Source: Zootoca vivipara
Taxonomy: Eukaryota
DNA length: 64,000 nt
NCBI RefSeq assembly: GCF_963506605.1
Contig: NC_083281.1
Coordinates: 83,824,001 to 83,888,000 of the forward strand
Reading direction: 5' to 3'
This document shows, piece by piece, positions 5,489 to 39,004 of this stretch. The translations under genes were made by a program, and so were the position numbers. Within the stretch, counting starts at the first letter, position 1. Each line of letters opens with the position of its first letter. The notes beneath the pieces are model-generated. The model saw nothing but the letters and a program-made list of their open reading frames with translations, was not told the DNA's origin and did no database searches.

Positions 5489-5668
5489 GTGACTTTTAAT
5501 TTAGCATAACAGTGAAAGTGTGCAAGCATTTTTTTGCATAAATCATGCAAATAAAACAAATAGCCATAAAACTATAATCTTAGCCACCTTTATCACCTCT
5601 GCCATCATTAAAATTGTTTTCAAACAGTTTGTCTGAATTTTACATGAAGGGGCATTATACCTTGTTTA

Positions 5669-6028
5669 AAAGGTAAAGGTAAAGGACCCCTGACAGTTAA
5701 GTCAAGTCGCAAACCGCTCTGGCGCTCATCTCGCTTTACTGGCCAAGGGAGCTGACGTTTGTCCGCAGACAGTTTTTCCAGGTCATGTGCCCAGCCTGAC
5801 TAAGCCACTTCCGGCGAAACCAGAGCAGCGCATGGAAATGCCTTTTACCTTCCCGTGGAGCAGTACCTATTTATCTACTTGCACTTTGATGTGCTTTCGA
5901 ACTGCTAGGTTGGCAGGAGCTGGGACCAAGCAATGGGAGCTCACCCCATTGCGGGGATTTGAACCACTGACCTTCTGATCGGCAAGCCCTAGGCTCTGTG
6001 GTTTAGACCACAGTGGCACCCGCATCCC
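5669..6028 (-). mobile_element. Sauria SINE, near full length
   Basis: Minus strand starts GGGATGCGGGTGCCACTGTGGTCTAAACCAC and ends in an (ACCTTT)n tail; 13-bp TSD tataccttgttta at 5656-5668 and 6029-6041. Confidence 0.9.
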
Positions 6029-7794
6029 TATACCTTGTTTAGAGGTTTTTAAATGGATATTGTGTGGACGGTCACTGGAAGGACAGAGAACTGAGACAAT
6101 CTTCCACCACCTTCAGAATACAGTGTACCAATGACATGTTTTTCCATGATCTGGCACTGGCACAATATCAGGGAGTAGGACAAATAGGCAAGTCATGTAG
6201 CAACCACTTCAGTGAGCTATGGAGAATATATAGGAGAAGAGTTCCACACTTTGAGGTCAAAGAGAGGAAATCAACAAGTAGGTCATAGCTGTATAATGAG
6301 AGGAGCTGGGAACTGGATTTCTCGCTTAAGGAATATAAGTAGCAGGACAGTGGTTACTTAGCTGGACAGTAGAAAATCCTCCTCCCCCATATTCTTTATG
6401 CCAGGCCAACCCCAGAGGACCTGGCTGCCCAGGTATGGTTACTGTTTCCTTTACTTCTCACTGTATATTGTATCTCTATCCAATAAGGTGCAGCAACAAA
6501 TAGGCCTGTGCTTTCCAATCTGTGCTTCAGTACTTAAAGGACATCAAAGCATGATGGCACAGAAATATACAACCTGTCAGTTAATGAAGACCTTAACATG
6601 AAAGGCCGTGAAAAGAGCAAAAGCAAGCTGCAGACAGGAACTGGGAGGGTGTAAATATGCTGGGATCTGAGATGATCACTAACACGTACCCAGCAAGCAG
6701 CAGGCAGTAATGATGATTAATTATTTAAGAAAAACTGAGTGCGTCAGCTCAGACTGAAGCAGGGGAGGGGGTGAGACGGAAACATCACTCTGGGATCCTT
6801 CTGTTAGAGTTACATTAATTAGCACGGTGTGTGAAGCGCAGAAAAATATCCAAAGACATTCTATCGTGAGGTGGGAGACCTGCAATTAAGGCATCTGTTT
6901 ACCCTTTGTATCTGACAGAGATGGCTTTTGAAGGAATTACTGGCTTAATGCAATTTTAAAAACACACCATATGTTCTGCTTTGTCCTCATTTGGCTGCTT
7001 GATTGTATCAATGTCTCAGGGCAGGGCGGGGGATAATCTGTGGCCCTCAGATGTTCTAGGATGCTAACTCCCATCAGTCCCAGCCAGTATGGCTGATGGT
7101 CAGGGATGATGGGAGTTGTAAATCCAACTAAAGCTGGAGGGCCACAGATTCCCCACCCTTGCTTTAGGACAGGGCAAAATCTCCTTCCCTGCAATTTCTA
7201 GTTCTTCCCTCTGCAGCAAGAGAAAGAAAAAAGTTCCACCTCAGTATACTTGAGGACCACTATTATATGTGTGCCCAACCCCCCCTGGAAGATTTTATTT
7301 ACTATTTATTGATTGCCTTTCTGCAAAGTCTGGTGGTACCCAGCTAATGCAAAGCAGGGACTTGTAGTTGATAGGTGATTGGGAGGGGCAACTCAAGCAA
7401 ACATTATCTTTGCTGCAGAACTTGCACTGCCTTGTTCCAAGGGACAGAATTTTAGGAGAGGACAAGGTGATGGATAGTAAGAAAAAAAATGCAGGTACAT
7501 TAAGGGTGAATCAAACGGGAAAGCATTTCAGCAAGAAAGGGAGGGGATGGGGGAGATTGAGCACAGGACAAGAAGCTATTTGCAAGCTGCTGTTGCTCCT
7601 GACCCAGTTCTTAGTCTGATATGGTCTGATCCTCTAGAGATGTACAGAAGGAACGGCAAGTGACATCATCTTTGTTTAAATGGCTGCGGTGCACAGCTCT
7701 CAAACCTGCTTGCTTTCCCATACACATCTTTTTAAAATGATAGTTTAATCTTAACCTATAACTCAAGTGATATTAGGAAGCTTAATGACTTTTA

Positions 7795-8012
7795 CAGTGG
7801 TACCTCGGGTTACTGACGCTTCAGCTTACAGACTCCGCTAACCCAGAAATAGTACCTCGGGTTAAGAACTTTGCTTCAGGATGAGAACAGAAATTGTGCG
7901 GTCGCGGCGGCAGCGGGAGGCCCCATTAGCTAAAGTACCTCAAGTTAAGAACGGTTTCAGGTTAAGAACGGCCCTCCGGAACGAATTAAGTTATTAACCC
8001 GAGGAACCACTG
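7795..8012. mobile_element. Tc1/mariner (Tigger-like) MITE
   Basis: TIRs CAGTGGTACCTCGGGTTA / TAACCCGAGGAACCACTG with TA on both sides. Confidence 0.85.
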
Positions 8013-8847
8013 TATTTGTAAATGATGTACTATTGGGTGACTGGTGTGTGTGTTTTATTATACAATGTAAGACCCTTTGGGGTAAGACCCCGCCCCCCAA
8101 AAAACCCGACTTTTTAAAGGCATTAAATGGCGTTATACATTTCTATAGTTTCCTGCTGTTGGTTCAGAGCTTTGCATGACACCTCCAGTTCCCTTTGCTT
8201 TATGCATCTTTTTTCCTAGCCGTAGCTGAAAATCAGGTATCATAAGCCCTAGCTCCTCCATTTGCTGCTTTGCACAGCCAGCCTTAACACTGGACAAAGA
8301 CGCTCTGCTTCAATCTCTTGCCGTTAGCCAACCATGATAATCTGCTTTGAAATTCATTTAGGATTCTTTCATAATCCAGCTGCCACCACACACCAAGACT
8401 TTCCATATGACCACAGGGGTAGATTAGTTCTGATGTTAAGATGGTGCTCCTGGTCAAATTGAAATCTTTGCCATGGCATAATTATTAGGATTTTACGCAC
8501 CCTTAGGAGAGCGCCCACTGTAACTTTTCGCCAGAAACAATTTTATGGACAATCAATATAATAAACTACATCCCGCATTTTTGGAATCCAAAATGACCAT
8601 TCTTTTTATGAGGACTATCCATATTATGAGGTATTGTTTTTACTTTTAATGAAGTATTCTTGCAGCAGGAAAAAAAGGCTGGGAAATTTTGTTCCCACTC
8701 CATAAGAGAAGAGATTAAGAGGCAAAAATAGTATATTTTGTATTTCATAATGTTGCATAACTTAGAAAAAGAGCATTGAGTGCAGAAAATGAATGACAAG
8801 TGACCTACCTCACAGGACTACTCTGAAAGCAAAGGATGGCTACAGCG

Positions 8848-9363
8848 CAGAGGTGGTGAACCCCTGGGCCAGTCTTCGCCTGCCAGGGGGTCCAAGTGAG
8901 CCTATGCATCCATTTCCCTCAAACCACGCCTTCTAGCTCTAGCCGATGTCTCTCGCAACATCATCATGTGACTGAAGGCAGGACAGGGTTAAATCCTGCA
9001 TTGGCTGTGTACCTGTTCCCATTAGAGAACAGATCAGAATTTAATCTCCCGCTTGTCTGCTGATGAGCAGGGGCAGGATACCATGTAAACCCCTTCTTGA
9101 ATCAGAAAGAGGTAAACATCAGAATTCTCTGCTAGAACAGTTTCCTTCCCTTCATTTTAGTAGGGCTTTCAATGCAAACCATCAAAAAGTCCTGTATAAA
9201 ACAAAGAGGGCCAGCATCATTTTTAGCAGCACTTTGCACCTGATGTCCTTGTGCTGTCAGGTGATTGATAGGTGGGTAGAGCCACCCACCTGATAAATTT
9301 GTTCAACATGGCCAATCCTGATGAGAATTTGGTCTGTGGAGCCAAAAAGGCTAACCACCCCTG
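8848..9363. mobile_element. Old hAT-type non-autonomous element
   Basis: CAGAGGTGG...CCACCCCTG termini; degenerate 8-bp TSD ctacagcg/ctatagag. Confidence 0.5.
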
Positions 9364-10468
9364 CTATAGAGAATGTTGCTCACTAGAAAAGATGCACCTG
9401 TAAGATACGTATATGTTCTCAATGCCGAGTAACTTTCCTTCTGCTTTCCACATCTGAAGAGGGACTTTCAGAGTTACTAATTTGCAGTTGAGTTTTTGAA
9501 AAGAGATTACAGTTTTACGCCAACAACACTAAGGCACCTTGAGCTTTCTTTATAATTGCTTTAAGCAAGTTCTGGATGCCTAACAAGAAAATACAACCCT
9601 CTCAAAGAATGTATTCCAAATTAAATGCCATATTTGAAACCATTGGCATTTTAAAGGGAAAGTTGTTGTTATAAGGCACTGCTTGTGTCCTTAAAAAGTA
9701 GATGGGTGGGGGAATATAAAATTGTCAATAAAGATAAAATGCATTTCTCAGTGATGGTTTATTAAAGTGAAATGAACAATATGCAAAGAGAGACAAGTAA
9801 ATGCAAATCTCTGAGCTGAGTGAGGGAGAGAGATCAGAAGAAGAAGCCTGTTTAAAGCCGGTGTGACTGCTGGGTTTGGCTCAAGGCACGGATTTGCAAT
9901 GGCACAGCAGCAAAGCTTCCCTTCTGCAGGCAAGGAACTAACCCTCTAATCATCACTAATGAGACAGCTACAGCATTTCGGGGAAAGGTCTGTAACCACT
10001 GTGACTTCACACAAGCTGTTATGTAGCCATCAGTTTTAAAAGGGAAGAAACATTTAAAAGGATGCAATTCCCAACTGCCAAGGCCTAATCACAAGCCACA
10101 GAGGGCAGTGAAGACCACAAACAGGGCAGTCAACTCTAGGAAATGCTGCACAGAGGCTTTCAGAGTCACAAAGCTCAAACACATACACACTTCCCAGTAG
10201 ACCTGCTCTCTCCTCTAACCAGGGTTTCCCCATATTTCTGTGGGACATAAGCCACCACACTTTGGAACTGGATGCTAGGTATGGTGGTATGGCTTCTCCC
10301 CATGTTTCCCATGGGCTTCTTGCTCTTTGAACAGACTACATAACAGGCAGAAATTCAGCTGATTGAGCTTTCCATTGTATTGACAGTAAAGGCTGCAACT
10401 CTTTACTGCTTACTTGTTGGGCAGCTTTTAAAGGCAAAAGAGTGCTGCCAGGGTGAAAAGGGAACCCT

Positions 10469-10958
10469 CAGTGGCGTAGCAAGAGGGGGCGATAGGGGCG
10501 GTCCACCCAGCGACTCCCAAGGCGAGCCCCTCCAGCCTCCCAGTAAAAAGCCCGCTCAGCACGGCATGGCGCGCTGAGCCGAGCAAGCTTTTTACCTGGA
10601 GGCTCGGGAGTCGGGGGGTGCCGACTGTCACCCCTGTCCAGCTCCAGGGTGGCACCTGCCCACCGCGCCGAGCGAGGCTTTCTAGGCTGGAGGCTCTGTT
10701 TAGGCTCCATTTTGAAGTCGCGGGGGGGGGGGGTCCTCTCTACGTATCACGCATGTGCAGCGGGATGCTATCTACCTGGAGCCTGGACGCTCCGTTTAGG
10801 CTCCGCTTTGAACTCGCGGGGGGCACGATCCCCCTCTACGTTGTACGCATGCGCAGCTTCATTACGTAGCAACGCATGCGTCATTACGTAGCAACGCCCC
10901 GCCCCCTGGGCACGGCAATTTGCCACCCCGGGTGACAAAGCGGCTTCCTCCGCCACTG
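10469..10958. mobile_element. CpG-rich hAT-type non-autonomous element
   Basis: TIR CAGTGGCG...CGCCACTG; 8-bp TSD ggaaccct/gaaaccct; internal direct repeats (gtttaggctcc...cgcggggg; cattacgtagcaacgc x2). Confidence 0.8.
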
Positions 10959-11055
10959 GAAACCCTAACATGTTCTCCACTGTAAAACCTCATATGTGAC
11001 TTTTGTTTTTTATCTGTCAAATCTATGACTAAAGGAAGTTTTCAACAGCTCCAAT

Positions 11056-11303
11056 TAGGGCTGCCATACATCCTGATTTTCCAGGACATTACTGGGATTT
11101 CAAAGGCAGAATTGACATCTGGGGGGGGGGGATTTCCAAATGGCAGCGCTTTGTCCTGTATGTTAGGCAAGTCAATCCAAAAATCGTGGGTTTTTTGGTG
11201 TTTTTGTAAAGAAAAGCTCAACAATTTCAGTGGTTTCCTAAAAAAAAAAAATCATCAATTTTCCGGTGTCCTGGTTTTAACTTTTTGAAATATGGCAACC
11301 CTA
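11056..11303. mobile_element. hAT MITE with TAGGG-type TIR
   Basis: TAGGGCTGCCATA...TATGGCAACCCTA; 8-bp TSD gctccaat/actccaat. Confidence 0.8.
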
Positions 11304-14152
11304 ACTCCAATAAACTAGAGCTTTCAGTCCCAGATCCAAAAGTAAACCTGACCTCAATCTTCTGTGTGTCTAACATTGGACAGTATGGTCTTGAGTTGAA
11401 GACAGTGAAAATTGAGGAGCACCAACCTACGGGGAGATTCACAACTTAATTTTGCTCACTGCAGATCAAGCTTTTTCTAGACTGAACCCACTTTAGGCTA
11501 CAGGTGGAAATTGGATGTTTGACTTCACAATCCTGAATCCCTGCACACAGAAAGCTGTCATTTCCTAGGGTGGGAGGTGGGGGGCTTACAGCCTAGCCTT
11601 CTCTCTGACAAACAATTCCTCTGCAGCTGAAAGAGAAAGAAAGGGAAGAGCGTGCATTGGGAACAGGTATAAGAGGGACATTTAAACACACACATCCCAC
11701 TAGCTCCTGCAATGTGAATCAGTGGAGTTCAGCAAACGATTTACCTCTTAATTCTGGTGGTTTAACAGCCTTGGTATTGTAGAAGCACTGTTGTGGTGGT
11801 GGGAAAGAGACTGCAGAGGGACATTTTCTACTTGCCCCTGTTTCATAACTCATAATCCTATTTGGAAATGTGCCGGCATAATTGATCGATAAAACATGGA
11901 AGGTAGTTGCCTGTTTTATGGCTGATTTACTGTGGCCATTGTTCACTAATAAGCCAGCTGTTCCTCCCAGCCTCATGTTCATGCACTCCCAAAAACTGCT
12001 GAATAAGGGAGAGAGTCATGTTTTGGCAGCATTGCAGTATGCTACAGCCAGCACCCTTTTGGCAACCTACGCATGCCTGCTAGCCAGGAAAATAGAATAT
12101 AGGCATTGTGCTTGTTCCTTTTTTAAACTGGGGAGGGGAGAGGGAGAGAGAGCAGCAGTTTCTCAAGTTACTATACAATGAGTTCATCTGGGAGCTGTGG
12201 CAAGGGCAAGAGAATTGATTGGCAGGGGTGATATTCAGTACTTTCTTTTAAAAAGAAATTAAAATCAGGCCCCAGGAAAGCTTACATATATGATCTGTAA
12301 CAAGCAGAAGAGATAGAAACAAGGAAGAAGTTTCATATTCAGGATTAAATCAATACAGTTTTTCAAATCCACTCACTTTCTGGGGTTCTAAGTGAACAAG
12401 ATCTGTAGTGATTAGGAAAACGGCATTCTGCATGTAAATTCAACTGTTAAGACTGAAGAGGTGAGTCCTGCAACAAACTAAGGTTAGAAATGAACGGAAA
12501 TGACAGAGAAAAAGAATGTGGATGGCTTTAAAATGCAAAAAAGGGGTGAAACAAGTGTAGAGGAGATAGTAGGGCAGAAAGATATGCTCTCCAACACCAC
12601 GCCCCCACCCCCACAAAAAAACAACAACCCAGTTGGATAGTTACTAAGTTGTAGCTAACCAAGTCCTACTCCGAGTAGACCCATAAAAATTAACAATTTA
12701 ACCATGTCTGCTAATTTGAGTAGGACCTGGTTAGAAGCATCACTAAAGACACTCTGCACATGCCAAGAGGCAATTATTTAGGGAAAAGCTACAAATATTG
12801 CAACCAGACCAAGAGGATGCCCTCCACAGACAAAAACTTGGCAAACTACCCACCACCCAGTGAGAAACCTAGTGTGGCCTTGCTGTCTAGGGCTAAGGAG
12901 ACCCAGATTCAAGACCATATTTGGGCTGGCTAATTACTCTTTCTGAGCCTGACCTACCTCACAGGGTCATTGTTGCAAGGATAAAATGGGTGGTGGGGGA
13001 GATATACAGAGAGGGAAGAATGGAAAAGGAACGAAAAAGTCTGTCACTCAATAGTGGAGCACCTAAGAGCACAGGTTTAATTGCCAGCATCTTCAGGTTG
13101 GGCTGGGAATGACCCCTCTGAAATCCTGGCGCACAGCTGCTGGTCAGTATAAAAAACACTGAGCTTGATAGACTTGGAAAAAGGCAACTTCCTATACTCC
13201 TAAATGAAAATTGTTGAGAAGGAGCCCAAAGGGACAAGGGAACTTTTAAGCTCAAGCCTGTAAGTCAAAATCAACCCGCATCTTAAGTCAGGCCTGGAAG
13301 ATGACAGGGCAGGGCTAACAAGGTCAACAGACAGCAAGCGCCACCTTCATTCGGCAACAGAACAGGCAGCATCTAAAAAAAGTAGGATTCTTCTGTTTGT
13401 TTCTACTTGGAAGGAAGCAGTTTCGTGCCTGCCTCCCAAAACACGAGGGAAGAATGGCAGATTGTAGCCAATAACACGCCTGGCTACAGTAGGAGGCCAG
13501 AAACAGGGCTTATTGACTGTGTTCCTTGTCATTCTGGTCCACAATGTTAAATTGGCCCAGAAAGCTCCCAACAGGGCTGCTATTGTTTGCCAATCAAGGC
13601 ATGGAGGACACAATGCTGCCCATTCATCTCCCAAGAGAAACTGGGAGGGCAGGAGGGCGCTCGGCTTGTTTTGAGACAAGCAAAACTGTGTCGCATTCCA
13701 CACTAGAGCTACATTCTCTCCACCACCCCACTTAAAAAAAAACACGATTCCAGCAAATCAACTGAACTCACACAGCCATCAAGTACCAAGAGCTGCTGAA
13801 GAGAGATGCTTTCTGCCATCACATGTAACAAAAACAATAGAGAAAACATTTTACTAGAGAAATGCACATTTTAAAGTGGGGAAAATACATACACAATGCA
13901 TACATTCAGAAGGTTACACAATTAAGTTACTTGGTTTCATTTCCTTGATTTTAAAAAGTACCACTTCGTGTTTTTCGCCTCTGAACTTGTGCAGCCCAGC
14001 TTGCAAAAGGGCACTTCAAAAACGGTCTACATTGTAGGTTAGCTTGCCGTTAAGATAAAGAGCGTTACAAAAAAGTTTGTAAGAAACACACAAATACAAC
14101 ATGGTAAAAAAACAAAAACCCAAGATCCAATGCAGCTGAACGTAGCCTGCTT

Positions 14153-21217
<7,065 letters not shown>

Positions 21218-21234
21218 TTATTTAATCTGCCAAT

Positions 21235-21715
21235 ATCATAACAATGTTATACAAATTGATGGTGCAACTGCGTTTGGAATATTGTATGCAGTTGTGGATA
21301 CCTCACTTCAAAAAGGATATTGTAGAGCTGCAGAAGGTTCAGAAGACAACAAAAATGATCAAGGGGATGGATTATCCTGCCCCCCCCATCCCGCATAAGG
21401 AAAGATTGCATCATTTGGGACTTTTTACTTTAGAGAAAAGGCAAACAAGAGGTGACATGATATACGTCATGATATTATTCATGGAATGGAGAAAGCACAG
21501 TGAAACATTTTTCTCCCTCTCTCATAACACTAGAACTCATGAGCATCCAATGAAGCTGAATGTTGGAAGATTCAGGATAGATAAAAGAAAGTACTTCTTC
21601 ACACAGCACATCGTTAAATTGTAGAACCCACTCCCACAGCCACCAACCTGGATGGCTTTAAAAGAGGATTACACATATTCATGGAGGGCAAGGCTATCAA
21701 TGGCCACATCACAAT
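21235..21715 (+). mobile_element. CR1 LINE 3' fragment
   Basis: ORF 21244..21624 resembles the decayed CR1 ORF2 C-terminus (LEYC.Q.W.P..KKDI..L.KVQ; LGLFTLEKR..RGDMI; RKYFFTQ). Confidence 0.85.
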
Positions 21716-21723
21716 GGCTATAA

Positions 21724-21859
21724 CAGGCACCCCCAACCTTTGGCCCTCCAGATGTTTTGGACTACAATTCCCATCATCCCTGACCACTGGTCCTGTTAGA
21801 TATGGATCATGGGAGTTGTAGGCCAAAACATCTGGAGGGCTGCAGGTTGGGGATGCCTG
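21724..21859. mobile_element. 136-bp palindromic hAT MITE
   Basis: CAGGCACCCCCAACC / GGTTGGGGATGCCTG; TSD ggctataa/ggctatat. Confidence 0.85.
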
Positions 21860-23379
21860 GGCTATATTCTACCTCCACTATCAGAGGCATAATGCCTCTG
21901 AATATCAGTTGCTGGGAATCACAAGTGGGCAGAGTGCTATTGGGATTATGTCCAGCTTGCAGGCTTTTGACAGACATCTGATTGGACACTGTGAAAACAG
22001 GCTGCTGGACTAGATGAGCCATTGACTGATCCAGCAGACTTCTCTTATGTTCTTAAAAGGAAATAGCAGGCTAGTTATATAGCGAAAGTGACATAAAAGA
22101 GCTTTGCTCTAGTACAAAGGTAAATATCACCTTCTTTATTTAAACATGCCCATCCTATTCAAGAGGCTCAGATAAGATAATATTGTATTGGGGGATTATT
22201 GTAGCATGATTAACTCACCCTAGGAAGCAAAATTAATATAAAAAAAACCCAGGATGTTTGGTTTACTAGTTTCTAGTGCAAAAGTATTTCACGCCAAGGA
22301 CCAATATGTTCAGGGATGCCATGTTCCCCCCCCCCAGTTTATAAAATGTGTTTTAAAATTATAAATAGATTTCTTTTTAATCAAATAGGGGAGGGGACAC
22401 TCATCTAACTCTAGAGAACAGCCAGTTTGGCTCTGAAAGCCAGGGTAGAGTAGTGGCTGGCTGGCCTTTGGAGACCAGGGTTGAAATCCCCATTTGGCCA
22501 CGCAATCCCTTTTTAAAGAAACATTAGTCACAAATCAGTGTGCAATAACAAAAACAGAAAATCCAAATGACATTTAAGAAACATTACATACAAGCATACT
22601 TCATGATATTCTAAAAAAATAAGCAAAAACCAACTCCAGTCAGACAGCTCAGCATGTTATCAGCAATTTAGAACGTCATCTCTGTAGTCTAATTTACATG
22701 AGCTGCTGAAAGCTACAGAGAAAAAAAATAAAAATAAAAGCCTTTGAGGCCCACCTAAAAACATCAGTTCCCTGATCTGCAATTAATTTGAGGAGAAAAA
22801 TGTTAGGAGGGGCCCAGCGACAATAAACTGGGAGCCAGTCCCCCTAACACAAAATACCATTTCTGACACGCCCCACTCTCTTTTGTAGCTGGGGATGAAG
22901 CCTCACCAAGGAAAATTTGCCGCAAGCACAACCACCTCTCCAGGGTGCTAAACCTTACCCTAAATGAGGAGGGGAAGCCTCTGGCCCCTAGGATGCTCCC
23001 CAGCCGCACCCCCCCACACACACACACTGGCATCACACCCTCCTTGAGCCTTTTTGCATGGCCGGATTATTCCCCTCCCGCCTCCAGTAATCCTCCTTGC
23101 ATGCCCGAATGGAGAAGGGTGTGTGCACAAACTACCAACCTACTGTACAAAGGTGAAATTTGCACATCTTGTCCCGCCCACAGCTGGCATGTTCCAATCC
23201 CCCACCCCTACCCCAGAAGAGAATGGGCTGAAAATGGCTCCCCGCCCCAGCCCAAACCATTCAAAGCCCCCTCCCAGATCCTTACACCCTTCATACACCC
23301 ACCCACCCAGCCCACCATCCCTATTATCCTTCTTCCACTAATAGCTTCTCTTCTTACATACCCCAGATTATCCCCGCAT

Positions 23380-23870
23380 GCCCCTTACCCCCAGATAATC
23401 CACACTCCTTCAGCCTTCTAGAAAACCGACATTCCCAACTCCCCCAATCGCATCCTTTCTTCAGGCAACGGGGTCCTCTATTGCAAAAGCCCAAACCCTT
23501 CCCACTTCCGGTTTCAAGATTGTGTGCCGGGGGGACCGTTCCTAGCGACGGACACGACGCCTCTTTCGGCTCCCGCGACCAATAAGAAGCTTCCCTGTAG
23601 GTACTCGTGCAATACTGTTCCCCCGCAGGTGGCCAAACCCGCAGAGTTCGGTTCCGTCCCTAAAGCGTTGTCGCCCGGAATCTGTCGGGGAAGAGTCGCC
23701 CTCCAAACTGGTAAGAGCCCATCTAGGGGACCTTATGGGGTCGCGATATGGGTGAGTTGTTTTGGATTAGTGCGGGGGTTCTTAATGGCGACTGATGAAC
23801 CGGTGAGGCGACGGGGCTGTAGTGAAGTCAGGAGACCCTTGAATGACCCCGGAGGAAGAAAGTAGTGCGG
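23380..23870. promoter_or_regulatory. Bidirectional CpG-rich promoter for LZIC (-) and NMNAT1 (+), with non-coding first exons
   Basis: CpG enrichment; ETS site CACTTCCGG (~23503-23511); CCAAT (~23579); minus donors GG|GTAAGG at 23389 and 22959; plus donors CTG|GTAAGA (23710), TGG|GTGAGT (23751) and CCG|GTGAGG (23802); the head-to-head LZIC/NMNAT1 arrangement is known in mammals. Confidence 0.72.
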
Positions 23871-24153
23871 TGGTAATATAAGTTGATACTGTTCATATTT
23901 AGCGAGATTGTGAGTGATGGCGAATGCCAATTTTAACCTGCCTTCACGGGGGGGAGGGTGTATCCAGTGGAGATATACACGTGCATGCAGCTGTAAAAGT
24001 GTGGCACCTTTTTCCAGAAAGGGCTAAAATTAAGAATGGGCAACTGAGGATTCATTTCTTAAAATTATATGTGTGATCTTCAGCCATAGCACCCAGGATA
24101 GCTCATGGAATAAAACCGTAAGTTATAAATACAAGGGCAAAGGGCTGGAGATA

Positions 24154-24156
<3 letters not shown>

Positions 24157-24196
<40 letters not shown>
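24157..24196. repeat. (AAT)n microsatellite
   Basis: Direct reading. Confidence 0.95.
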
Positions 24197-24198
<2 letters not shown>

Positions 24199-24436
24199 TT
24201 ATTTATACCCGACCCTTCCCGGTTTAAAAGCTGGGCTCAGGGCGGCTAACAGCAAATATAAAACATTGATTAAAATGTGACTTTAAAAACAGCATAGAAT
24301 GCAACATAAATGTAGCATCAATGTCAATAAAATTCAAAAATTCAGGGTCGGGGTGGGCGGAACCCAGTTCAGTAAACATCAAGTGATAGCCAGGGCTAAC
24401 TTGCCAAGTTGGTCCTGATAGGAGGCTGAATAGCTG

Positions 24437-24725
24437 TCACATGGAGGATGGAGCAAGCTTGTTTTCTCCTGCTCCAAAGAGTAGGACCTGAATCAATGGC
24501 TTCAAGTTACAAGAAAGAGGATTCTGACTAACCATCAGGAAGAACTTGGCAAGAGCTGTTCGACACTGGCCATGAGAAGTGGTGGACTCTCCTTTATTGG
24601 AGGCTTTTAAACAGAAGTTGAATGGCCATCTGTCATGTACGGTATAATCTAGCTGAAATTCCTGCATTGTAGAGGGTTAATGACCTTCGAGGTTCCTTCC
24701 AACTCTGCAGTTCTGTGATTCTATG
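24437..24725 (+). mobile_element. CR1 LINE 3' end fragment
   Basis: ttgttttctcctgctcc...gaggcttttaaacagaagttg...ccttccaactctgcagttctgtgattctatg tail. Confidence 0.75.
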
Positions 24726-25604
24726 CTGTTACTGTACCTGGTAGCCCTTCCAAATGTAGGAACATAGCAAGCTACCTTATATTGGGTCAGGCTATTGGCC
24801 CATCTAGCTTGGTATTGTCTGCACTGACTGGCAGTAGCACTCCAGGGTTTGGGGCTGGAGTATCTCCCAGTCCTAGCTGGGAATTGACTCTAGGTCCTTC
24901 TTCGTGCAAAACAGACACTCTACCACTGAGCTATAGCCCTTCCCTATAATCAAGGCCATGGTGAAATATGGGTAATGAGGGGGTGTTGTGGGTGGGAGGT
25001 GAGAGATGTCTTCATGTTGTAAGACATAGATAGAGGAAGTCTGTGCTTCAAGATTTTGTATGAACCTTTAAAATAATAATAGTGCATCTAATCTGCTACT
25101 CCTGTACGTGGCTCAGCAGGCTGCAGGAAGTCACTCTAAAGTGCAGAGGGGAGCACAAAAGTACTTTAGTGCCATCCAGCTTGAAACTGCCTTGTGGTAC
25201 ATTTGGCAGAAAATCCATCACAGTGGAAATAGTGTCTATGTGGGGTCATTCTGTTGATCTGCAGCCCACTTCTTCATGGGGCCCAATGAGGCTGCATTTT
25301 CTCTGTAGGTGAATAATTGCTATCAACTTCTCTGAAAGGCTGAGTATAGGAGAGGGGCTTTTTTGGGTTTCTTAAAGCCAGTCACATTCCTGTACCTCTT
25401 ACAGCAGTGTGACATGTAGACATTTAGCAGGTGAAAGCTCTTCCTGGAAAAATTGATAACCAACTAAGTCCCACTCAGAGTAGATCCACTGAAATTAGTG
25501 GAACTACATTACTCACTTTTTAAAACTTAAATGGCTCTACTCTGTGTACAGTCTATTCTGAGTAAGACTTTTATTTTTTATTATTACCATTAGTATTATA
25601 GCAG

Positions 25605-26020
25605 TTATATTCCACCCTTTCTCCAATGAATTCAAAGTGGGGTACATACTCCCCCCCCCTTAATTTAAGCCCCACAACAACACTGTGAGGTGGGTTAGCG
25701 CTGAGAGGCAGTGACTGGCCCAAAGTCATCCAGTGAGCTTAATGGCTGAGTGGGGGTTTGGTCTCCTTGGTCCTAGTCCATCACGCTAACCACTACACCA
25801 AACGGTTTGCCAAACTTACCCTGTATTCATATCCCACCTTTCCTCCATGGAACTCAATGGTGGCATACACAGTTCTCTCCCTCTTACCCATTTTTTTCAT
25901 TGCAACAATCCTTTGAGGTAGGTTAGGCTGAGAGATTGTGACTGGCGAAAGGCTTCATGGCTGAGTGGGGATTTGAACCCAGGTCCTCATCTGACATTCT
26001 AACCACTGCACTACACTGGC
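25605..26020 (-). mobile_element. Two tandem MIR/Squam3-like SINE copies
   Basis: ccaccttt...caacaac.ctgtgaggt.ggttag...ggctgagtgggg...aaccactacacc occurs twice; related copies at ~12860-13000, 32232-32430 and 54940-55110. Confidence 0.65.
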
Positions 26021-27902
26021 TGTGGACTAGCACTGAATACAATGCACAGAGAAAATCTGTATGTTTGGGTTGCTGTTGCGGGTTGCTGTGCATGGGGGTA
26101 TGTGTCAGCTACATGGCCAGTCCTGCCCCCACTGATGGAAGTTGTAGTTCAGCAACCTCTAGAAAATAATACAGCCTATCCACCCCTAATATACAGGATC
26201 AGGATGTGTGATTATAAAGAAACCCAAAGTCAGAAACAGCCAGATGTTTTGCTTCTATTTTGTCTAACAGTCACTGGGCTGAGATGAATAGTTTAAGTGA
26301 AATCTTAATTTCCACCTTTTTAAGGCCGCTTGTGCTTAATGAGGGTGATTTCTGTATAAGCATGCTCAGGATTTGTTTAATTCCATTTATTAATCACTTC
26401 CAATAAAATATTTCAAAGCCATTTCACAGTAAAAAGATTGCACTGCATGTTCCCTAATCAAAAATCTTGCCTAGGAACTCTGACCTGGTCTAACTCTGAA
26501 TTGTTTAATACTACTAGATCAGAATTGTAACTTTGCTTAAACTCATCCATTCCTGAAGACAAATAGCTTTGAAACTTTTTTAAGGCTTCCTAAATACTTT
26601 CAAATTCATTGTGAAACAAATGTGAGGTTTAATCATACCGGGGAGACAGAGTTCTATAGGAGTTAGCTCCTCATTCATTGCTGATCACTAGATTAGCTGC
26701 TTTTTAAAAAGCAGAGTAAGATCTATTTCCAATCCAAACTTATTACATATTACTAATTTCAATAGCACCTTCTTAATTTATATGTAACTCTGGTTTCCTC
26801 TTCACAACAACTCACCCCTGCTGTATAAAGGTAACAGCCCCATCCATTGCTCCATCCAGTTTTTTGCCCGTGCCTGTACACATATTTTGCCCCAGACCAT
26901 GCCCTTCAGTGGCACATGGCCCCCAAAGCTTGCCCAGGGGAGAATGTGGCCCTTTCATTGGAAAAGTTTGACCACTGCTGCAACAGGTGGAGAAACCCAG
27001 CCTGATGGGTGGGGTAATATTATTATTATTATTATTATTATTATTAGGTGGTGCCAACTTTGTACTGTGGAGTCTGATCACATGATGAAGAGATCTGCTT
27101 AGAAGCCATTTTGGCATATAATTTAATAATCCCTTTGTGCAGCAAGCTAAACTCCACACACACAAGCACACACCCTAAAGCCAGGCCGTTATCTGGAGTC
27201 AGAGCCTCCCTTCCCAGGAATATACAATCTGACTATTTTAACAAAAGGCAATTTTTAGATTGCCTCTAAACAGCTGCCTGTCCCTCGAGCCTGAAAAAAA
27301 AAGCTACCTGAAATATTTCTGCTGGAGAAGAAAGCACCCTCTTAAAAACGTCCCCTTAAAGATAAAAGCAGCTGACTTGAGAACAGGCTACTCCCCTCAC
27401 TTTGAAACTGGAGCTCTGGAGCATCGCCTTCTTCTGTCTCTTGTTCCATACACGTTCCCATAGCAACCGTCTCCCAGTTAATCTGCTGCGAGGAGCTTCT
27501 CCATTAAGTCAGGAGTACACATACAAAAGGAGGAAAAGGCTTTGAGGGCTTACTGTTTTGCTCCCTTCCCACAAAAGAAAATATCTGTGGATTTTAAAAA
27601 ATATATTCTTTTAAAAAATAGTAGAATTTTCTACAAAAAGATTTTGAAAGCCAACAGCCTCCCAGAGCTATCCTTTAAAAAGAATCCCGAAAGCCACGAC
27701 TCCCCCACCTACTGCACCTCAAAAGGCTGCTTAATGAATAGTTAAAATCTTTGGCTATGAATATCCCCAGATCTGAAGGTCTTCCCACTGTGTCTGCTGC
27801 AGAGATCAGTCCGTTTCGAAAAGAGGGAAAGAACTGAAGGCAGTTTAGCAAGGCGCTCATCGTGGTAGGGGCAGACGAATCCAGTCCCTGGCAGATTGCA
27901 GG

Positions 27903-28033
27903 TCAGATGTGCCACAGGCAGCCGCACTCGGAGACTGGCTCATAACAGATCCCCATCTTAGTCTCTTTGTTCAGTATCAAGCCAGGAAAAACCACGTTCG
28001 CAAGCCAAAACAGTCCCAGGACAGAGAAAAATG
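27903..28033 (-). CDS. 4-TM gene, coding exon 6 (A-FFSVLGLFWLANVVFPGLILNKETKMGICYEPVSECGCLWHI*)
   Basis: Acceptor ccactttatag|CA; stop TGA at 27905-27903; 131 nt. Confidence 0.85.
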
Positions 28034-31000
28034 CTATAAAGTGGGGTGGGGGTGGGGGTGTGTGGATGCAATTAGAAGAAAAGATAGCACAATTTTGAAT
28101 TTGCTTTGCAAGTGCAAAATATTAGGACAGACCAAAACATTTCAGCTTTCTTTTCATGTGTTAAAGCTACTAGTCCTCATGATAGTGAAAAAACAAAAAC
28201 AAAAAACCGTGTGTGTGTGTGCGCGCGCATGTGAAAACCCAATCTTGTGTGTGCATGCGTAAGGGTAAATGCAACTTCCTTCTTCTCTTTTGCCTAAATA
28301 TTTGCTAAAACTCCCAAAACAGAACACATCAGCATCTAAGCTTTTGGATAGGCTTGTTTAAATAAGCATGTTTTAAGCAGGCACTGAAAAGAGTACAGTG
28401 AAGGTGCCTGCCTGGTGTCAATAGGCAAGGAGTTCCAAAGTATAGGTGCCCCCACACTAAAAAAAATATGATTTTTTTTACAACTGCGTAACAAGTATTA
28501 TCTGGAACCTGTAGCAGTGCCAGTACCACAGACTGAAGCAGTCAGCTCCGTGCATATGCGGTAAGATGCTTCTGCAAGTAAACTAAGCTGTTAAGGGCTT
28601 TATATGCCAATAGTAACACCTTGAATGTGGCCCAGTAACAAACAGACCACCATTGCAGATCTCTTAAATCTCTGCTTCGTGCCTGCTGCAGTCGGAATAG
28701 TTTTGACCCACAAAGTGGATGCTACTCATGTTTAAACCAAAAACCTGCCATGTAAAATGAAAATTATGCATTTAATGTCACAGCCTAATTTGACCTTAGC
28801 ATGTGGCCCTCCAGATATTATAGGACTCCAGCTTCCACCATCCCTGACTTATTGGCCATGCTGATGAGAGTTGTCATCCAAAATGAGGGCACTGAGTTGA
28901 AGAGGAAGGCTATTTTAGCGCAAAGAGGAAGCATGATACCTACCGGTTGATACTAGACTGCTCACCGAGAGAGTCACTGATAAGTAATAAAGCTCAGGGG
29001 TGGTTTTAGCCTATGGAAGACACAACAGTCCATTCGTTAGAAAAGGAGCTTTTAAAAAAATAATAATGAGAAGGTCCCATCTGCAGACTTGCAATCTAGT
29101 GAGATCCCATAAGGGTCAGAATAAAAACCCCATGCATTGGGAGCGTGTCGGACTGTCTTCAAGACAACCTACTCCCAAGTCACATTGCGATCAAGTAATA
29201 AATATATGAAAATACAGTCAAACCTCGGTTGTCGAATGTAATCCATTCTGGAAGACCGTTCGACTTTCGAAACGTTCGACAACCAAGGATCAACGGGTGG
29301 TTGGCAAAGTGGAGAGAGAAAAAAAGAAAACTCCCTAGAAGCCGTTCGGCTTCCGAAAATCGTTTGAAAACCAGAGCAGTTTCTTCTGGGTTTTTGGCAT
29401 TTGGGAGCCGAAATGTACAATAACGGAGGCGTTCGAGAACTGCGGTTTGACTGTACTAAAGAGTTATTAAGTTACAGCCCTTCCCTTATGACGTAGGAAG
29501 CATCCTTATTCTGAGTCAGACCATGGGTCCATCCAGCTCAACATGTCTACACTGACTGGCAGCAGCTTTTCTGGGGTTTTCAGACAGGGGACACTCTCAG
29601 CCCTGCCTGGAGATTTTGAGGATTGATCCCTGAGCCTTCTGCATGCAAACAAGTGCCCTACCACTAAGCTATGATATAAGCAGCTCTTGAGCTCCAAAAA
29701 CTGTGTAAACAACTCAAGAGCTGCTTATATGAGGGAACAAAACTTGGAATTCCTCCAGCCCAGAATTTCATTTTAAAACAAATTGTGTAGGACCTCTGGT
29801 TTGGGCCACCCAAAAGCTTCCCCTTATTCCGCTAGCTTGAGGGGTGGGGCAAGCTTTTGTTTTTAGGCATATAACAGAATCGGCAATTACTCACACATTG
29901 TGTGGCCAAGGCAGTAAATATGATGGTGCAAACTCCTTTTGCAAAAGAGGCGCCCCCAAAGATGAAGAAAGTGGTCTTCAGCTCCCATGGAACCGGTTCC
30001 AACATGACCAGAAGCAAAGCCAGCCCTGAAAAGATGGGAGGGGGAGCATTAAGAGTGCTAAAAATGCACTTGCACAGAAACAGGCAGGATGCAGGGCTGT
30101 TGACTGGTCATGTAGCAAGTTAGGAAGCTGCCTTAGTTGGAGGCAGGCCACTAGCCCATCTAGGTCAGTATTGTCTACACTGACTGGCAGCCACTCTCCA
30201 GGGTTTCAGGCTGGGTTATCTCCCATCCCTCCTGGAGATGTCAAGGATCAAACATGGGACTGTCTGCATGCAAAGCAGATGATCTGCCACAGAGCTATGG
30301 TCATTCCCCTAAACACAAAATAAATTCCTAGTCCTCATGGTTCTAAATAAAAGGCTGATTTAAACACAGAAAGCTGCAGAGTCAGGCCACTAGTCCATGT
30401 AGCTCAGTATTGTCTACAATGACTGGCAGTGGCTCTCCAGGATTTTAGACAGGGGACCCCCCCCAGCCCAACCTGGAAATGCCGGGGATTGAACCTGGTA
30501 CTTTCTGGATGCAGAGTTCAGCAACTGGCTTATGTTTGATGTTTCAAGAAATTGTAGGATATTTCAACTACGCATACACATCACGGAACTACAAAACCTC
30601 CAAGTCCCAGCTGCCTTGGCTATCAGCCACAGATTTGCCTAGAAGCTTTAAAAATAAGAAAACGTTGACTGCCATTCCACATTTCTTGTGGCAATGAATA
30701 TCGCAGCTTAATGCAGCATTCTGCAGTGGTGCACACCTAAATTCCCAAGATTTGCCCCCAGTACTTCCTCAATGACGGTGGGCAGCTTCAAGGAAAGGCC
30801 CCCAAATGGAGTGTGCAAATGAGCGACAACTCCAGGGTGGTGCCCTCTGCCTGTGCAAATCCTCCATTTGGCACATGTGCTGTGCACCGAGAGACCCTCG
30901 ACTGCCTTCAGTATACAACCCCTTAAATTGGACCCTTGCTAGCCTTGTCATATTAAAAAAACACGCAACTTCTGGATGAACAAAATACTTTTGGGCACAT

Positions 31001-33021
31001 AATTCAGCCCACCAGGCAATGGCAAGAGACCCAGACAAACCACGGTTTACCCACCAATGGTGAAGAATGTAAAGATGATGCTTCCAACCAGATTGTAGAG
31101 GAGGGGCAAACCACAGTAATGAGATGATCTAGGTCTGGAAAAAAAGGGTTGAGGAACCACTGTGGATCTTGAACCAAAGGTTTTGGGTCAATATGTGCTT
31201 CTTCAGATATAGTCTGGCGTGTATACACACCCAAAAGTTTGCACCAGAGTAATTCCAGTACTTTGCCAATAAAAGCTTGCTTCATCGACCTGTATAAATT
31301 ATGCACATTTCCATATATTTGTCCATTATTTGCATAAATTCATGCTAGTTCAGGGCAACAAAGTTCTTCCCTTGGCAAGTCCTGGTTTCCCTTTTGGCTT
31401 CATCCTTGCACTTTTACACCTTCCTCGGCCACCTTAAGATCTAGAAACTTGATTCTTGTACAGTGGTCCCTCGACTTACGAATGACTCAACATCCGTAGG
31501 TTTCGACTTATGAACGGGACAAATGGCCGCACGCTTACGAATTTTTCTACATCCGAACAGAAACCGTTGGTGGTTTTTAATGCGGTTTCCTCGACTTACG
31601 GATATTTTAATGCGGTTTCCTCGACTCTCATCATTCCCAGCCAGCATGACCAATAGTTTGGGATGATGGGAGTTGTAGTCCAGCAACACCTGGAAGGTGG
31701 GCTCCTTCTGTTTTTGATGCACCTTCCTCCCTATCATTATGGCACCTTACACAGGGCCTGGTGACCACAGCCTCTGAAACTGTTAACGTAACCCCAAAAC
31801 AGTCCCACAGCAGCTTCCCGTTGAATTTTCAGCCCTTCAGGTTCGGAGTTTGAACCCTCAGCCCGCCAAGGGGTGAAAGACCCGATAGCCTTATTGCCAA
31901 CAGAGATTTATACCAATAAAGACACCCAAAACCAATTCCAAAATCTTCATGGGTCAGGCTGCGAGCTCTCTCTTCTCAACGTCACCACCTCGGGATATTC
32001 CAGCCAGCTCCCCCCACGTTCTGGAAGGTACGCAAAGGTGTTGAGAGTTGTCGCAAGCAAGACAGGTGGATTTTAAAAACAAAACACAATAGCAATGCCC
32101 CTTGCTTTGTACCTTAGCAAGACGTAGAGCTGGAAAATGAAAGCAGCAATTCCAAGGGCAAATATAGCAAACTGCCTAAGGGGGGTAAGAGAAAAAAAAC
32201 CCAATGGTGTTTGTTTGTATGTTAGGGCATCTATATCCCACCTTTCCTCCAAGGAGATCTAGGTGTGGCATGCTTGGTTTTCATCCTCCCCATTTTTATC
32301 CTCACAACAGCCCTGTGGGGTAGGTTAGGTGGAGACACACACCCAGAGTCACACCCAGTGAGCTTCGTGGCTGAACAGGGATTTGAAAACTGGCCTTGCC
32401 CAGCTCCTAGCTCAACACTCATAACACTGCACAATGCATTAGCCATCACACTGTTATCTGTGGAGGCTGATCCAATAGGGTGAATGGGGTGCTGTCCCAC
32501 CAACCTCAGCTTCTCAGGAGGATGGGGAGGAAACTAGAATTCACTGGCTCTGCTTGTCATTGGCTCTGGCCCCACCTATTGTTCAGCTCCCTGCTCCCCA
32601 CCCCCCGCTGGTCCCAGTGCACACTAGTCACCTGCCAACCCTTGGGGAAAATCTCCCGCAGTTCCATAGTTCTGGCGGTCACTTGCAAGCAGCGTGTTAA
32701 GTGGCAGGTTCTTTTTCTTGCAACCAAACCACCGAAGTCATCAAGGAGCAGCTTGGCGCTGCAGTCGGGTAACATTTGACCAACCTTCTCTCCCCAACCT
32801 GGGGCTTATCCAGATGCACCGGACTACACGTTTCATTGCAGGGGGTTGGACTAGATGACCGTTGGGGATCCCTTCTATGATACACCTCCCAACAGCCCCA
32901 GCCAGCCCAGCCCAAGATGCTGGTACGCCCAAGATAAGGGTTCTTACAGTCTGAGTCGGTGACGCTTTGGGAGCCGTCGGCTGAAGTGGTAGGCTGTGTG
33001 AGCTAGGCAGAAATGGATCAT
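27903..33021 (-). CDS. Six-exon gene missed by the ORF track, encoding a 181-aa four-transmembrane protein (probable TMEM274 orthologue); complement(join(27903..28033,28944..29010,29895..30025,31055..31134,32113..32175,32948..33021))
   Basis: 546 nt; five GT-AG introns with matching phases 2,2,1,0,1; no internal stop: MIHFCLAHTAYHFSRRLPKRHRLRLQFAIFALGIAAFIFQLYVLLRPRSSHYCGLPLLYNLVGSIIFTFFTIGLALLLVMLEPVPWELKTTFFIFGGASFAKGVCTIIFTALATQCAKTTPELYYLSVTLSVSSLVSTAFFSVLGLFWLANVVFPGLILNKETKMGICYEPVSECGCLWHI*. The name comes from recalled synteny only. Confidence 0.88.
28944..29010 (-). CDS. 4-TM gene, coding exon 5 (AKTTPELYYLSVTLSVSSLVST)
   Basis: tgtcttccatag|GCT ... ACC G|gtaggt; 67 nt. Confidence 0.85.
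29215..29453. mobile_element. Tc1/mariner MITE
   Basis: TA-CAGTCAAACC.CGGTT.TCGAA / TTCGA.AACTGCGGTTTGACTG-TA. Confidence 0.8.
29895..30025 (-). CDS. 4-TM gene, coding exon 4 (G-LALLLVMLEPVPWELKTTFFIFGGASFAKGVCTIIFTALATQC)
   Basis: catcttttcag|GG ... TGT|gtgagt; 131 nt; partly visible in ORF 29832..30017. Confidence 0.88.
31055..31134 (-). CDS. 4-TM gene, coding exon 3 (R-PRSSHYCGLPLLYNLVGSIIFTFFTI)
   Basis: ttttttccag|A CCT ... ATT G|gtgggt; 80 nt. Confidence 0.85.
32113..32175 (-). CDS. 4-TM gene, coding exon 2 (L-QFAIFALGIAAFIFQLYVLL)
   Basis: ctcttaccccccttag|G CAG ... CTA AG|gtacaa; 63 nt. Confidence 0.85.
32948..33021 (-). CDS. 4-TM gene, coding exon 1 (MIHFCLAHTAYHFSRRLPKRHRLR); exon extends to 33039
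   Basis: Acceptor ctcttcctccccag ending at 33040; GCT ATG (purine at -3); donor CT|gtaaga; 74 coding nt. Confidence 0.8.
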
Positions 33022-33885
33022 AGCGGATCTCCCGAGAACCTGGGGAGGAAGAGCAGAGTCTCCCCTTAGGATCAGTGGGTTGATTCTCCTGGAATTTTAA
33101 CACGAGACCAGAAGCCCACCCGAATACCAGTTCTTTGCCCAACTTGGGGCCTTCCAGATTTTTGGGGTCTGTCTCCAGGCGCCTCACGCTTACAGCTCCC
33201 ATCGGTGTGCTTGGCTGGAGCTGATGGGAGTTGTAGTCCAAAACATCCAGAGGGCACCAGGTTTAAAAGAGGATCAAAACAAATTCATGGAGGAGAGGGC
33301 ATAAGTGGCTACTAGCCGGGACGGTTATGCTCTACAACTGGATATTATTACCTATAATGGCTATGCTCTCCCTCCATGTAGGAAGCAGGATGCTGGTTCC
33401 TGTGCTGTTGCGCTGGGGTCATGCTTTGGGTCTCCCCAGAGGCATCTAGCTGGCCACTGCCTCCTCAGGGAGCACATAATGGCAAATAACTATAACATTT
33501 AATTAAAACAGGGCTTCTCAGAAACGAGTTCTTGAGCGTGTGCAGAACGCCTCTACCTCACAATGCAGATTATGTGTGTGCTTATGGTTAGAGACATCTG
33601 ATGGGGGGGGAGGAATGGTATGCAATATTTAATATTAGAGTGGAGGTGGGGTGGTAATTGCATACATTGGATATTTAGAAACCCACAACATCCAAGGGAG
33701 GCAGTGTTCCTGAGTATGTGAGGAGTTCATATGAGAAGGACTGTCTTCCTCCTCATCTACTGTACAGAAATCTACAAGGAGGAGGGAGAGAGGGGGGAAA
33801 GTGACAGCTTCCCAGGGGAGAACTCCGGCACAGTTCCGTTAGGGAACTCGGCCCCTTCACTATTTCCTCCCCGTTTTAACCTTAC

Positions 33886-34150
33886 CAGTAGCACCGGATG
33901 CCTCGATGAGGTTCGGTACCGCCTGGCCAAGCCGCCGCTTGCAGCCTCTCTGCAGCCGCTGTCTTCCTCCGGCCTCTGGATCGCCCTCTGCGCGGCCCGC
34001 GCAACCCCCCCCCCCTTATCCCGCCCCTCGCAGATTGCCGGTCGCTGCTCCTTCCCCTAAAGGCAGGCGACGCGGTGCAGGCGACGGCAGGCAGCACCGC
34101 CTGCTGCCCGGGTGATTTCAGCTGATCCGAGCGATCAGGTTACAGGATCG
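33886..34150 (-). promoter_or_regulatory. Small CpG island: promoter and non-coding exon 1 of the 4-TM gene
   Basis: Local CpG enrichment; GC box CCGCCCC at 34021-34027; strong minus donor CTG|GTAAGG at 33886; no ATG in the exon. Confidence 0.65.

Positions 34151-36115: not shown

Positions 36116-39004
<2,889 letters not shown>

What the first reader, a model, noticed from the sequence alone, without database searches (positions are those of the whole stretch)
27903..34150. Hidden intact four-transmembrane gene between LZIC and the NMNAT1 coding exons (probable TMEM274 orthologue)
Seen: six coding exons of 63-131 nt, each with a polypyrimidine-AG acceptor, and five GT donors. Intron phases chain correctly (2,2,1,0,1) into a stop-free 181-aa ORF with four hydrophobic segments. 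A separate CpG-rich first exon has a strong donor at 33886. Only one exon shows up in frame in the ORF track, and five phase-matched junctions giving a coherent membrane protein are unlikely by chance. Recalled, not verified: human has a TMEM274P pseudogene in the NMNAT1 region, with a coding counterpart in mouse. Inference: this is an ancestral amniote gene of unknown function, intact in lizards and lost in human.
Basis: partly seen in the sequence, partly recalled or inferred. Interest (0 to 1): 0.92.

Follow-up and report, generated by a model that had tools for sequence, protein, structure and literature searches.

The report
Lizard TMEM274 gene, real but known

Summary
Six minus-strand coding exons with canonical AG/GT sites join in phase into a 546-nt, 181-aa ORF with four hydrophobic helices. 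A CpG-rich non-coding first exon sits upstream.

Transcript contigs from the same species show two of the six junctions exactly: exon 1/2 and exon 6/7.

The peptide is 97% identical over 181 of 181 residues to the NCBI model LOC114602951 of Podarcis muralis. It is 57-59% identical to rodent proteins named Tmem274. In a gene tree that follows the species tree, it sits beside Podarcis inside the squamates.

LZIC (minus strand) and the NMNAT1 coding exons (plus strand) flank it in the window.

Mudge et al. 2019 (PMC6886504) already described TMEM274 as coding in mouse, a unitary pseudogene in human, ancient and weakly expressed. Searches here found it from sharks to mammals, so it is older than amniotes.

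It matches no Pfam or NCBIfam family. Its predicted fold is a generic four-helix membrane bundle with no significant structural match, so its function remains unknown.

This scan also noted the same stretch as s1-853134.

Verdict: real gene, already known, low interest.

The parts
33886..33989 (-). Non-coding first exon (5' end not mapped; at least to 33989) inside a CpG-rich promoter region (about 33801-34200)
   Evidence: In one search, X1 contig record 5 joins 33955..33884/6 to 33037/9..32959 and runs 34 letters beyond 33955. CpG observed/expected is 0.86-0.91. There is no ATG in the leader.
32948..33039 (-). Exon 2; the CDS starts at ATG 33021 (residues 1-24 and two bases of codon 25)
   Evidence: Splice sites are shown. 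The exon 1/2 junction is seen in an X1 contig. tblastn with P0038 gives 100% identity over residues 1-25.
32113..32175 (-). Exon 3 (transmembrane helix 1)
   Evidence: Splice sites are shown. tblastn matches P0038 residues 26-46 and P0030 residues 23-45. No junction for this exon was listed in the reads.
31055..31134 (-). Exon 4 (conserved loop RPxSSxYCxxPLLxNL and the start of helix 2)
   Evidence: The acceptor at 31134 is used in 4 X9 RNA reads, joined to an alternative donor at 31914. tblastn with P0038 gives 100% identity over residues 46-73.
29895..30025 (-). Exon 5 (end of helix 2, EPVP loop, helix 3)
   Evidence: The library search with this exon alone gave 13 hits, the best at E 1.8e-07. 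tblastn results are.
28944..29010 (-). Exon 6 (CAKTTPELYY loop and the start of helix 4)
   Evidence: X1 contig record 1 covers 28944-29010 exactly and joins it to 28033. tblastn results are.
27903..28033 (-). Exon 7 coding part (end of helix 4, Cys-rich tail, TGA at 27905-27903). The 3' UTR continues to at least about 27856.
   Evidence: X1 contig record 1 shows the 28944|28033 junction and 104 further letters past 27960. tblastn with P0038 gives 95% identity over residues 139-181.
31914..32112 (-). Alternative exon sequence ending at a donor after 31914 (GTATAA). If it is an extension of exon 3, the main frame stops at 32075-32073.
   Evidence: One search shows a joint 31914->31134 in 4 X9 reads with 3 start points. 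Hemicordylus isoform X1 (P0009) aligns to 32160-31948. The ORF 32073..32252 is listed.

Best explanation
This is the lacertid orthologue of TMEM274, a single-copy gene of jawed vertebrates. It lies on the minus strand between LZIC and the NMNAT1 coding exons. It is transcribed at low level from its own CpG-rich promoter and spliced from seven exons.

Shown: the product is a 181-residue protein with a basic N-terminal helix, four transmembrane helices and a Cys-rich C-terminal tail.

Inferred from charge distribution (six K/R before helix 1): both ends face the cytosol, so loops 1 and 3 face the lumen or outside. Each of those loops carries one invariant cysteine (C53, C116), which probably form an inter-loop disulphide. 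The short EPVP loop and the tail CYxPVSxCxCLWH[VI] would be cytosolic.

Working guess, with low confidence: it acts as a small non-enzymatic scaffold or accessory subunit of a membrane complex, in the manner of other four-pass proteins such as MARVEL proteins or sarcospan. I do not think it is a transporter.
For: - Gene structure and ORF.
- Spliced contigs for junctions 33886|33039 and 28944|28033, and use of the 31134 acceptor.
- Identity: 97.2% to P. muralis LOC114602951 over the full length, 66-71% to gecko, skink and anole models, 57-59% to proteins named Tmem274.
- The family has more than 200 members from sharks to mammals.
- All invariant and near-invariant residues are present.
- The gene tree follows the species tree, with the window sister to Podarcis at 100/98 support.
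- Flanking genes: LZIC ICAT hit at E 7.5e-15; NMNAT1 last exon against PDB 1kqn at E 2.5e-66.
- AF2 model: pLDDT 82, pTM 0.71, four long helices plus an N-terminal helix.
- Charge counts per segment.
- PMC6886504 describes the family and its weak expression.
Against: - Only two of six junctions were seen directly.
- Depth on the exons in three RNA runs was below about 1, with roughly 6% of each run read.
- The only exon 4 junction with three or more reads uses a different, probably non-productive upstream donor.
- dN/dS could not be computed because no relatives' DNA could be fetched.
- Topology, the disulphide and the scaffold role are inferences.
- Fold matches (best Z 8.5, synaptophysin) are within the noise stated for helical bundles.
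Confidence: 0.92

Rival explanations
1. The locus is transcribed, but in this species it mostly gives non-productive isoforms, so the 181-aa protein is made rarely or not at all.
For: The only exon 4 junction with three or more raw RNA reads joins donor 31914, not 32113. If this is exon 3 extended, the frame stops at 32075-32073. Overall depth is very low.
Against: The ORF and every family-invariant residue are intact. The protein is 97% identical to Podarcis muralis at the same length. Only about 6% of each run was read, and junctions with fewer than 3 reads are not listed. Weak expression is typical of this gene in all species.
Confidence: 0.06
2. It is a member of a known small-transporter family (the CrcB/Fluc fluoride channel or the YciB/IspZ septation protein A), as some database names for relatives suggest.
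For: UniRef names the Vicugna member 'Fluoride ion transporter CrcB', and NCBI names several teleost members 'probable intracellular septation protein A'. One teleost member gives weak NCBIfam matches.
Against: Those matches score 15-22 bits against curated cut-offs of 165-277, and four other members give none to either family. There is no Pfam hit at E <= 1. No PDB sequence hit appears at E <= 10 with the family profile. Neither family appears in the top 50 rows of either fold search.
Confidence: 0.02
3. It is a chance ORF or a decaying pseudogene remnant with no coding function.
For: There is no Pfam family and expression is low.
Against: Five phase-matched junctions give a protein of conserved length. 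Invariant residues are kept across 85 sequences from sharks to mammals. The exon blocks are recovered with paddlefish and hamster proteins. Spliced transcripts exist.
Confidence: 0.01

Closest known systems
TMEM274 / Tmem274 (mouse coding gene; human unitary pseudogene TMEM274P; Mudge et al. 2019, PMC6886504)
   Same: It belongs to the same protein family: 57-59% identity to rodent proteins of that name, shared invariant residues and four helices. It shares weak expression. In the window it sits beside LZIC and NMNAT1.
   Different: The lizard protein keeps the ancestral 181-aa form with a Cys-rich tail ending in CLWHI. The same type of tail is found in sharks, coelacanth, gar, bowfin, eel and frogs. 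Eutherians are 162-163 aa and end in ..AKPTV, and most teleosts also lack the tail.
Podarcis muralis LOC114602951 (NCBI 'uncharacterized protein', 181 aa)
   Same: It is 97.2% identical and the same length. Only five substitutions separate them: V43I, T106N, I108V, A150V and M165T.
   Different: It comes from a different species or population. The window's own annotation status is unknown.
MARVEL-domain proteins (synaptophysin) and sarcospan, which are four-pass scaffold proteins
   Same: They are the best structural superpositions: synaptophysin 9bra_s at Z 8.5, rmsd 3.4 over 114 residues, and 9c3c_n at Z 7.8-8.3. They share four helices with both ends on one side.
   Different: There is no sequence or Pfam match. 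The Z scores are within the tool's stated background for helical bundles. So this is a resemblance in architecture only, not membership.

Membership tests
TMEM274 | Significant full-length sequence similarity to proteins named Tmem274 | tested here: met
   Against P0030 (Phodopus Tmem274): 57% identity over 155 aa, E 4e-59. Against P0039 (Peromyscus): 59% over 141 aa, E 4e-57. These are local BLAST results. Exon 5 alone gives E 1.8e-07 to 7e-04 against 1.84 billion proteins.
TMEM274 | Family-invariant residues (S49, C53, P56, T110, C116, L123, S127 and the near-invariant set) | tested here: met
   All are present in the window's peptide (against A1). The invariants over 85 sequences are listed.
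TMEM274 | Orthologous (species-tree-like) placement with no sign of paralogy | tested here: met
   In the IQ-TREE analysis of 34 rows, the window is sister to Podarcis (100/98). An amniote clade (98/96) holds the rodent Tmem274 rows. Cartilaginous and ray-finned fishes each form a starred clade (100/99; 98/95 without paddlefish), and the two frogs pair at 100/100.
TMEM274 | Conserved position beside LZIC and NMNAT1 | tested here: inconclusive
   The window side is met: LZIC exons lie at 17091-21217 on the minus strand, and NMNAT1 coding exons lie at about 36209 and 38603-39001 on the plus strand. The mouse side was not tested here.
TMEM274 | Four transmembrane helices | tested here: met
   AF2 helices span 19-45, 56-80, 86-112 and 121-153 (folded on P0038 as a stand-in).
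CrcB / Fluc fluoride channel | Match to the CrcB profile at the curated cut-off, or to the Fluc fold | tested here: not met
   The best match is 15.4 bits against a cut-off of 173, in one teleost member only. There is no Pfam hit. It is absent from both fold-search lists.
YciB/IspZ septation protein A | Match to the family profile at the curated cut-off | tested here: not met
   The match is 22.1 bits against a cut-off of 277.
MARVEL domain | Pfam MARVEL match, or a fold match clearly above background | tested here: not met
   There is no Pfam hit at E <= 1. Synaptophysin scores Z 8.4-8.5, within the background for helical bundles.

The most novel reading that the evidence does not exclude
Squamates keep the ancestral gnathostome form of TMEM274, including a cytosolic Cys-rich tail (CYxPVSxCxCLWH[VI]) that eutherians and most teleosts replaced independently. 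The gene may also have been lost in birds, crocodilians and turtles, since no such row appeared among the 120 best family hits. If so, lizards would be the amniotes in which the full ancestral protein can be studied.
Probability: 0.3. Interest if true: 0.3.

Novelty: already known. Interest (0 to 1): 0.15.

Why it matters
It confirms that reading splice sites and phases by eye can recover a real small gene that ORF tracks miss. It also adds a transcript-supported squamate member to a family whose function is still unknown. Beyond that it changes little. The family was published in 2019, and the same 181-aa protein is already predicted in a sister species. The modest added value has three parts: the ancestral C-terminal tail is kept in lizards; an invariant cysteine pair suggests a topology that can be tested; and several database names for family members (CrcB, septation protein A, chitin synthase 2, LZIC) are unsupported.

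Tried and rejected
- Pfam on each of the six exons by reference gave no family. Pfam and NCBIfam on full-length relatives gave none at threshold.
- A first guess at the LZIC and NMNAT1 exons from the ten longest ORFs gave no Pfam hits. Short motifs then located them.
- The family profile against PDB sequences gave 0 hits at E <= 10.
- Foldseek against the PDB with both models found nothing below E 0.6. VIA-align wide gave a best Z of 8.4-8.5, which is not above background.
- The ESM Atlas listed a chordate cluster, a giant-virus-rich cluster and a mollusc cluster at 0.93-0.96, as leads only. A scan of viral contigs with the family alignment found no relative.
No DNA of relatives was therefore available, so I ran no dN/dS and no direct synteny check in other species.
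- The joined 181-aa peptide was never sent to a search or fold tool. It was built only inside scripts from window.fa and compared there with fetched proteins. Database searches used single exons by reference, and folding used P0038 (97% identical) as a stand-in.
- No complex prediction was run, because no binding claim is made.

Full report
**The observation**

On the minus strand the six coding exons are:
- 33039-32948
- 32175-32113
- 31134-31055
- 30025-29895
- 29010-28944
- 28033-27903

Each follows a pyrimidine tract and AG, and the first five each end before GT. The first ATG of exon 2 is at 33021. From there the joined sequence is 546 nt, which is 181 codons plus TGA, with intron phases 2, 2, 1, 0, 1. 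Hydropathy shows four hydrophobic blocks.

The proposed first exon ends CTG|GTAAGG after 33886. It lies in a region with GC 0.66 and CpG observed/expected about 0.9. No ATG precedes 33021 in the leader.

**Transcript evidence**

One read-laying run was allowed, so I laid 27960-33955 on three raw RNA-seq runs and one set of contigs from the same species.

- One contig in run X1 joins 33886 to 33039 (exon 1/2) and runs at least 34 letters further upstream.
- Another X1 contig covers exon 6 exactly (28944-29010), joins it to 28033 (exon 6/7) and runs about 104 letters past 27960 into the 3' UTR.
- In run X9, four reads with three start points use the exon 4 acceptor at 31134, but joined to a donor after 31914 rather than 32113.

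Depth over the exons in the raw runs is below about 1, with roughly 6% of each run read. Junctions with fewer than three reads are not listed. So two of six junctions are shown directly, one acceptor is shown, and four junctions remain untested.

Most reads on the stretch belong to interspersed repeats at about 31560-31760, 32760-32960 and 33160-33360. Low expression agrees with the literature on this gene.

**Identity**

Pfam found nothing in any exon. Exon 5 alone (43 aa, by reference) found 13 proteins at E <= 0.001 among 1.84 billion. Several of them match at the same residue numbers, 74-116.

Their records name uncharacterised proteins of Varanus, Hemicordylus, frogs, a newt, an elephant shrew and koala. 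Searching from two of these relatives and then from an alignment brought in more than 200 proteins:
- cartilaginous fishes: sharks, rays and chimaera
- coelacanth
- ray-finned fishes: paddlefish, gar, bowfin and many teleosts
- amphibians
- squamates
- mammals

Two rodent entries are named Tmem274.

I built the window's joined peptide only inside scripts and compared it there with the fetched proteins:
- 97.2% identical over 181 of 181 residues to Podarcis muralis LOC114602951
- 66-71% to gecko, skink and anole models
- 57-59% to the Tmem274-named rodent proteins
- about 50% to frogs

It carries every invariant and near-invariant residue of the family.

The hamster Tmem274 protein recovers the first five; as in other eutherians, its C-terminus differs.

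A maximum-likelihood tree of 34 rows broadly follows the species tree. It places the window beside Podarcis (100/98) inside an amniote clade (98/96) that also holds the rodent Tmem274 rows. This is orthology, not a new paralogue.

**Surroundings**

LZIC lies on the minus strand. Its exons are at 21217-21056, 19008-18661, 18362-18192 and 17222-17091, and the last gives an ICAT hit at E 7.5e-15.

NMNAT1 coding exons lie on the plus strand. The first is at about 36209, with a CTP_transf_like match. The last is at about 38603-39001 and matches human NMNAT1 structure 1kqn residues 148-278 at E 2.5e-66.

A second CpG island at 23401-23800 has a plus-strand GTAAGA donor near 23711. It is the candidate shared LZIC/NMNAT1 promoter. 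If NMNAT1 exon 1 is there, TMEM274 is nested antisense in NMNAT1 intron 1, as the scan's other note on this stretch (s1-853134) proposes. I could not test that.

**What is known**

Mudge et al. 2019 (PMC6886504) introduced TMEM274P as a human unitary pseudogene and Tmem274 as a new mouse coding gene. They report that it is ancient, with synteny back to coelacanth and possible relatives in scallop and Trichoplax. They also report at best weak expression in all species examined.

The phrase 'ancestral amniote gene' understates its age.

**Protein and likely mode of action**

Because the joined peptide has no reference, I folded the 97%-identical P0038 with family alignments.
- With 28 sequences: pLDDT 71.7.
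- With 85 sequences: pLDDT 82.2 and pTM 0.71.

The better model has helices at 2-16, 19-45, 56-80, 86-112 and 121-153, and a low-confidence tail.

Six K/R residues precede helix 1, against two in loop 1 and one in loop 3. By the positive-inside rule, both termini would be cytosolic and loops 1 and 3 exoplasmic. Each of those loops holds one cysteine that is invariant across 85 sequences, C53 and C116. I infer an inter-loop disulphide.

The tail motif CYxPVSxCxCLWH[VI] is kept from sharks to lizards. It is replaced in eutherians (..AKPTV) and most teleosts.

Fold searches gave no significant match. Foldseek found nothing below E 0.6. VIA-align gave synaptophysin at Z 8.4-8.5 and a dystrophin-glycoprotein-complex four-pass chain at Z 7.8-8.3. 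Both are within the background the tool states for helical bundles.

My working guess is a small scaffold or accessory membrane subunit. That is inference with low confidence.

**Misleading names**

The names CrcB and septation protein A attached to some members rest on matches of 15-22 bits against cut-offs of 165-277. Other names, 'Chitin synthase 2' for Varanus and 'LZIC' for rat and turbot, are annotation artefacts.

**Limits**

I therefore ran no dN/dS and no direct synteny check in other species.
- Constraint is inferred from preserved length, frame and invariant residues across jawed vertebrates.
- The apparent absence of birds, turtles and crocodilians among the 120 listed family hits is only a lead.
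- The N run at 51283-51468 was left untouched.

**Verdict**

The gene is real and is the TMEM274 orthologue. It is already known, so interest is low.

Noticed in passing
window 31914-32160 (minus strand): There is an alternative donor after 31914, joined to the exon 4 acceptor in 4 RNA reads. The same region is translated in Hemicordylus capensis isoform X1 (P0009), so this minor isoform may be shared among lizards. In this window the main frame would stop at 32075-32073.
   Followed up: partly
window 31560-31760, 32760-32960, 33160-33360: Intronic interspersed repeats (containing the motif GGACTACAACTCCCATCA) draw almost all RNA reads laid on the stretch. Many joints on opposite strands and many loose ends show that these reads come from other copies across the genome.
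   Followed up: no
window 23401-23800: This CpG island has a CCAAT box and a plus-strand GTAAGA donor near 23711. It is the candidate bidirectional LZIC/NMNAT1 promoter and NMNAT1 exon 1. If so, the TMEM274 gene is nested in NMNAT1 intron 1.
   Followed up: partly
window 17091-21217 (minus) and 36209-39001 (plus): LZIC coding exons (ICAT domain) and NMNAT1 coding exons were located. The NMNAT1 last exon matches human NMNAT1 residues 148-278.
   Followed up: yes
window 3701-5000, 10501-11000, 16401-17000, 53001-53700: There are further CpG islands. The one at 16.4-17.0 kb lies inside or next to LZIC. The ones at 3.7-5.0 kb and 53.0-53.7 kb may mark other promoters.
   Followed up: no
relatives P0001, P0024, P0034, P0072, P0089: Database names for family members are misleading: 'Chitin synthase 2' (Varanus), 'Fluoride ion transporter CrcB' (Vicugna), 'LZIC' (rat, turbot) and 'septation protein A' (teleosts).
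   Followed up: yes
family hits: No bird, turtle or crocodilian protein appears among the 120 best of 211 family hits, although squamates, mammals, amphibians and fishes are well represented. This may reflect loss or non-annotation in those lineages.
   Followed up: no
window 51283-51468: This is a run of 186 N (assembly gap or mask). I left it untouched.
   Followed up: no
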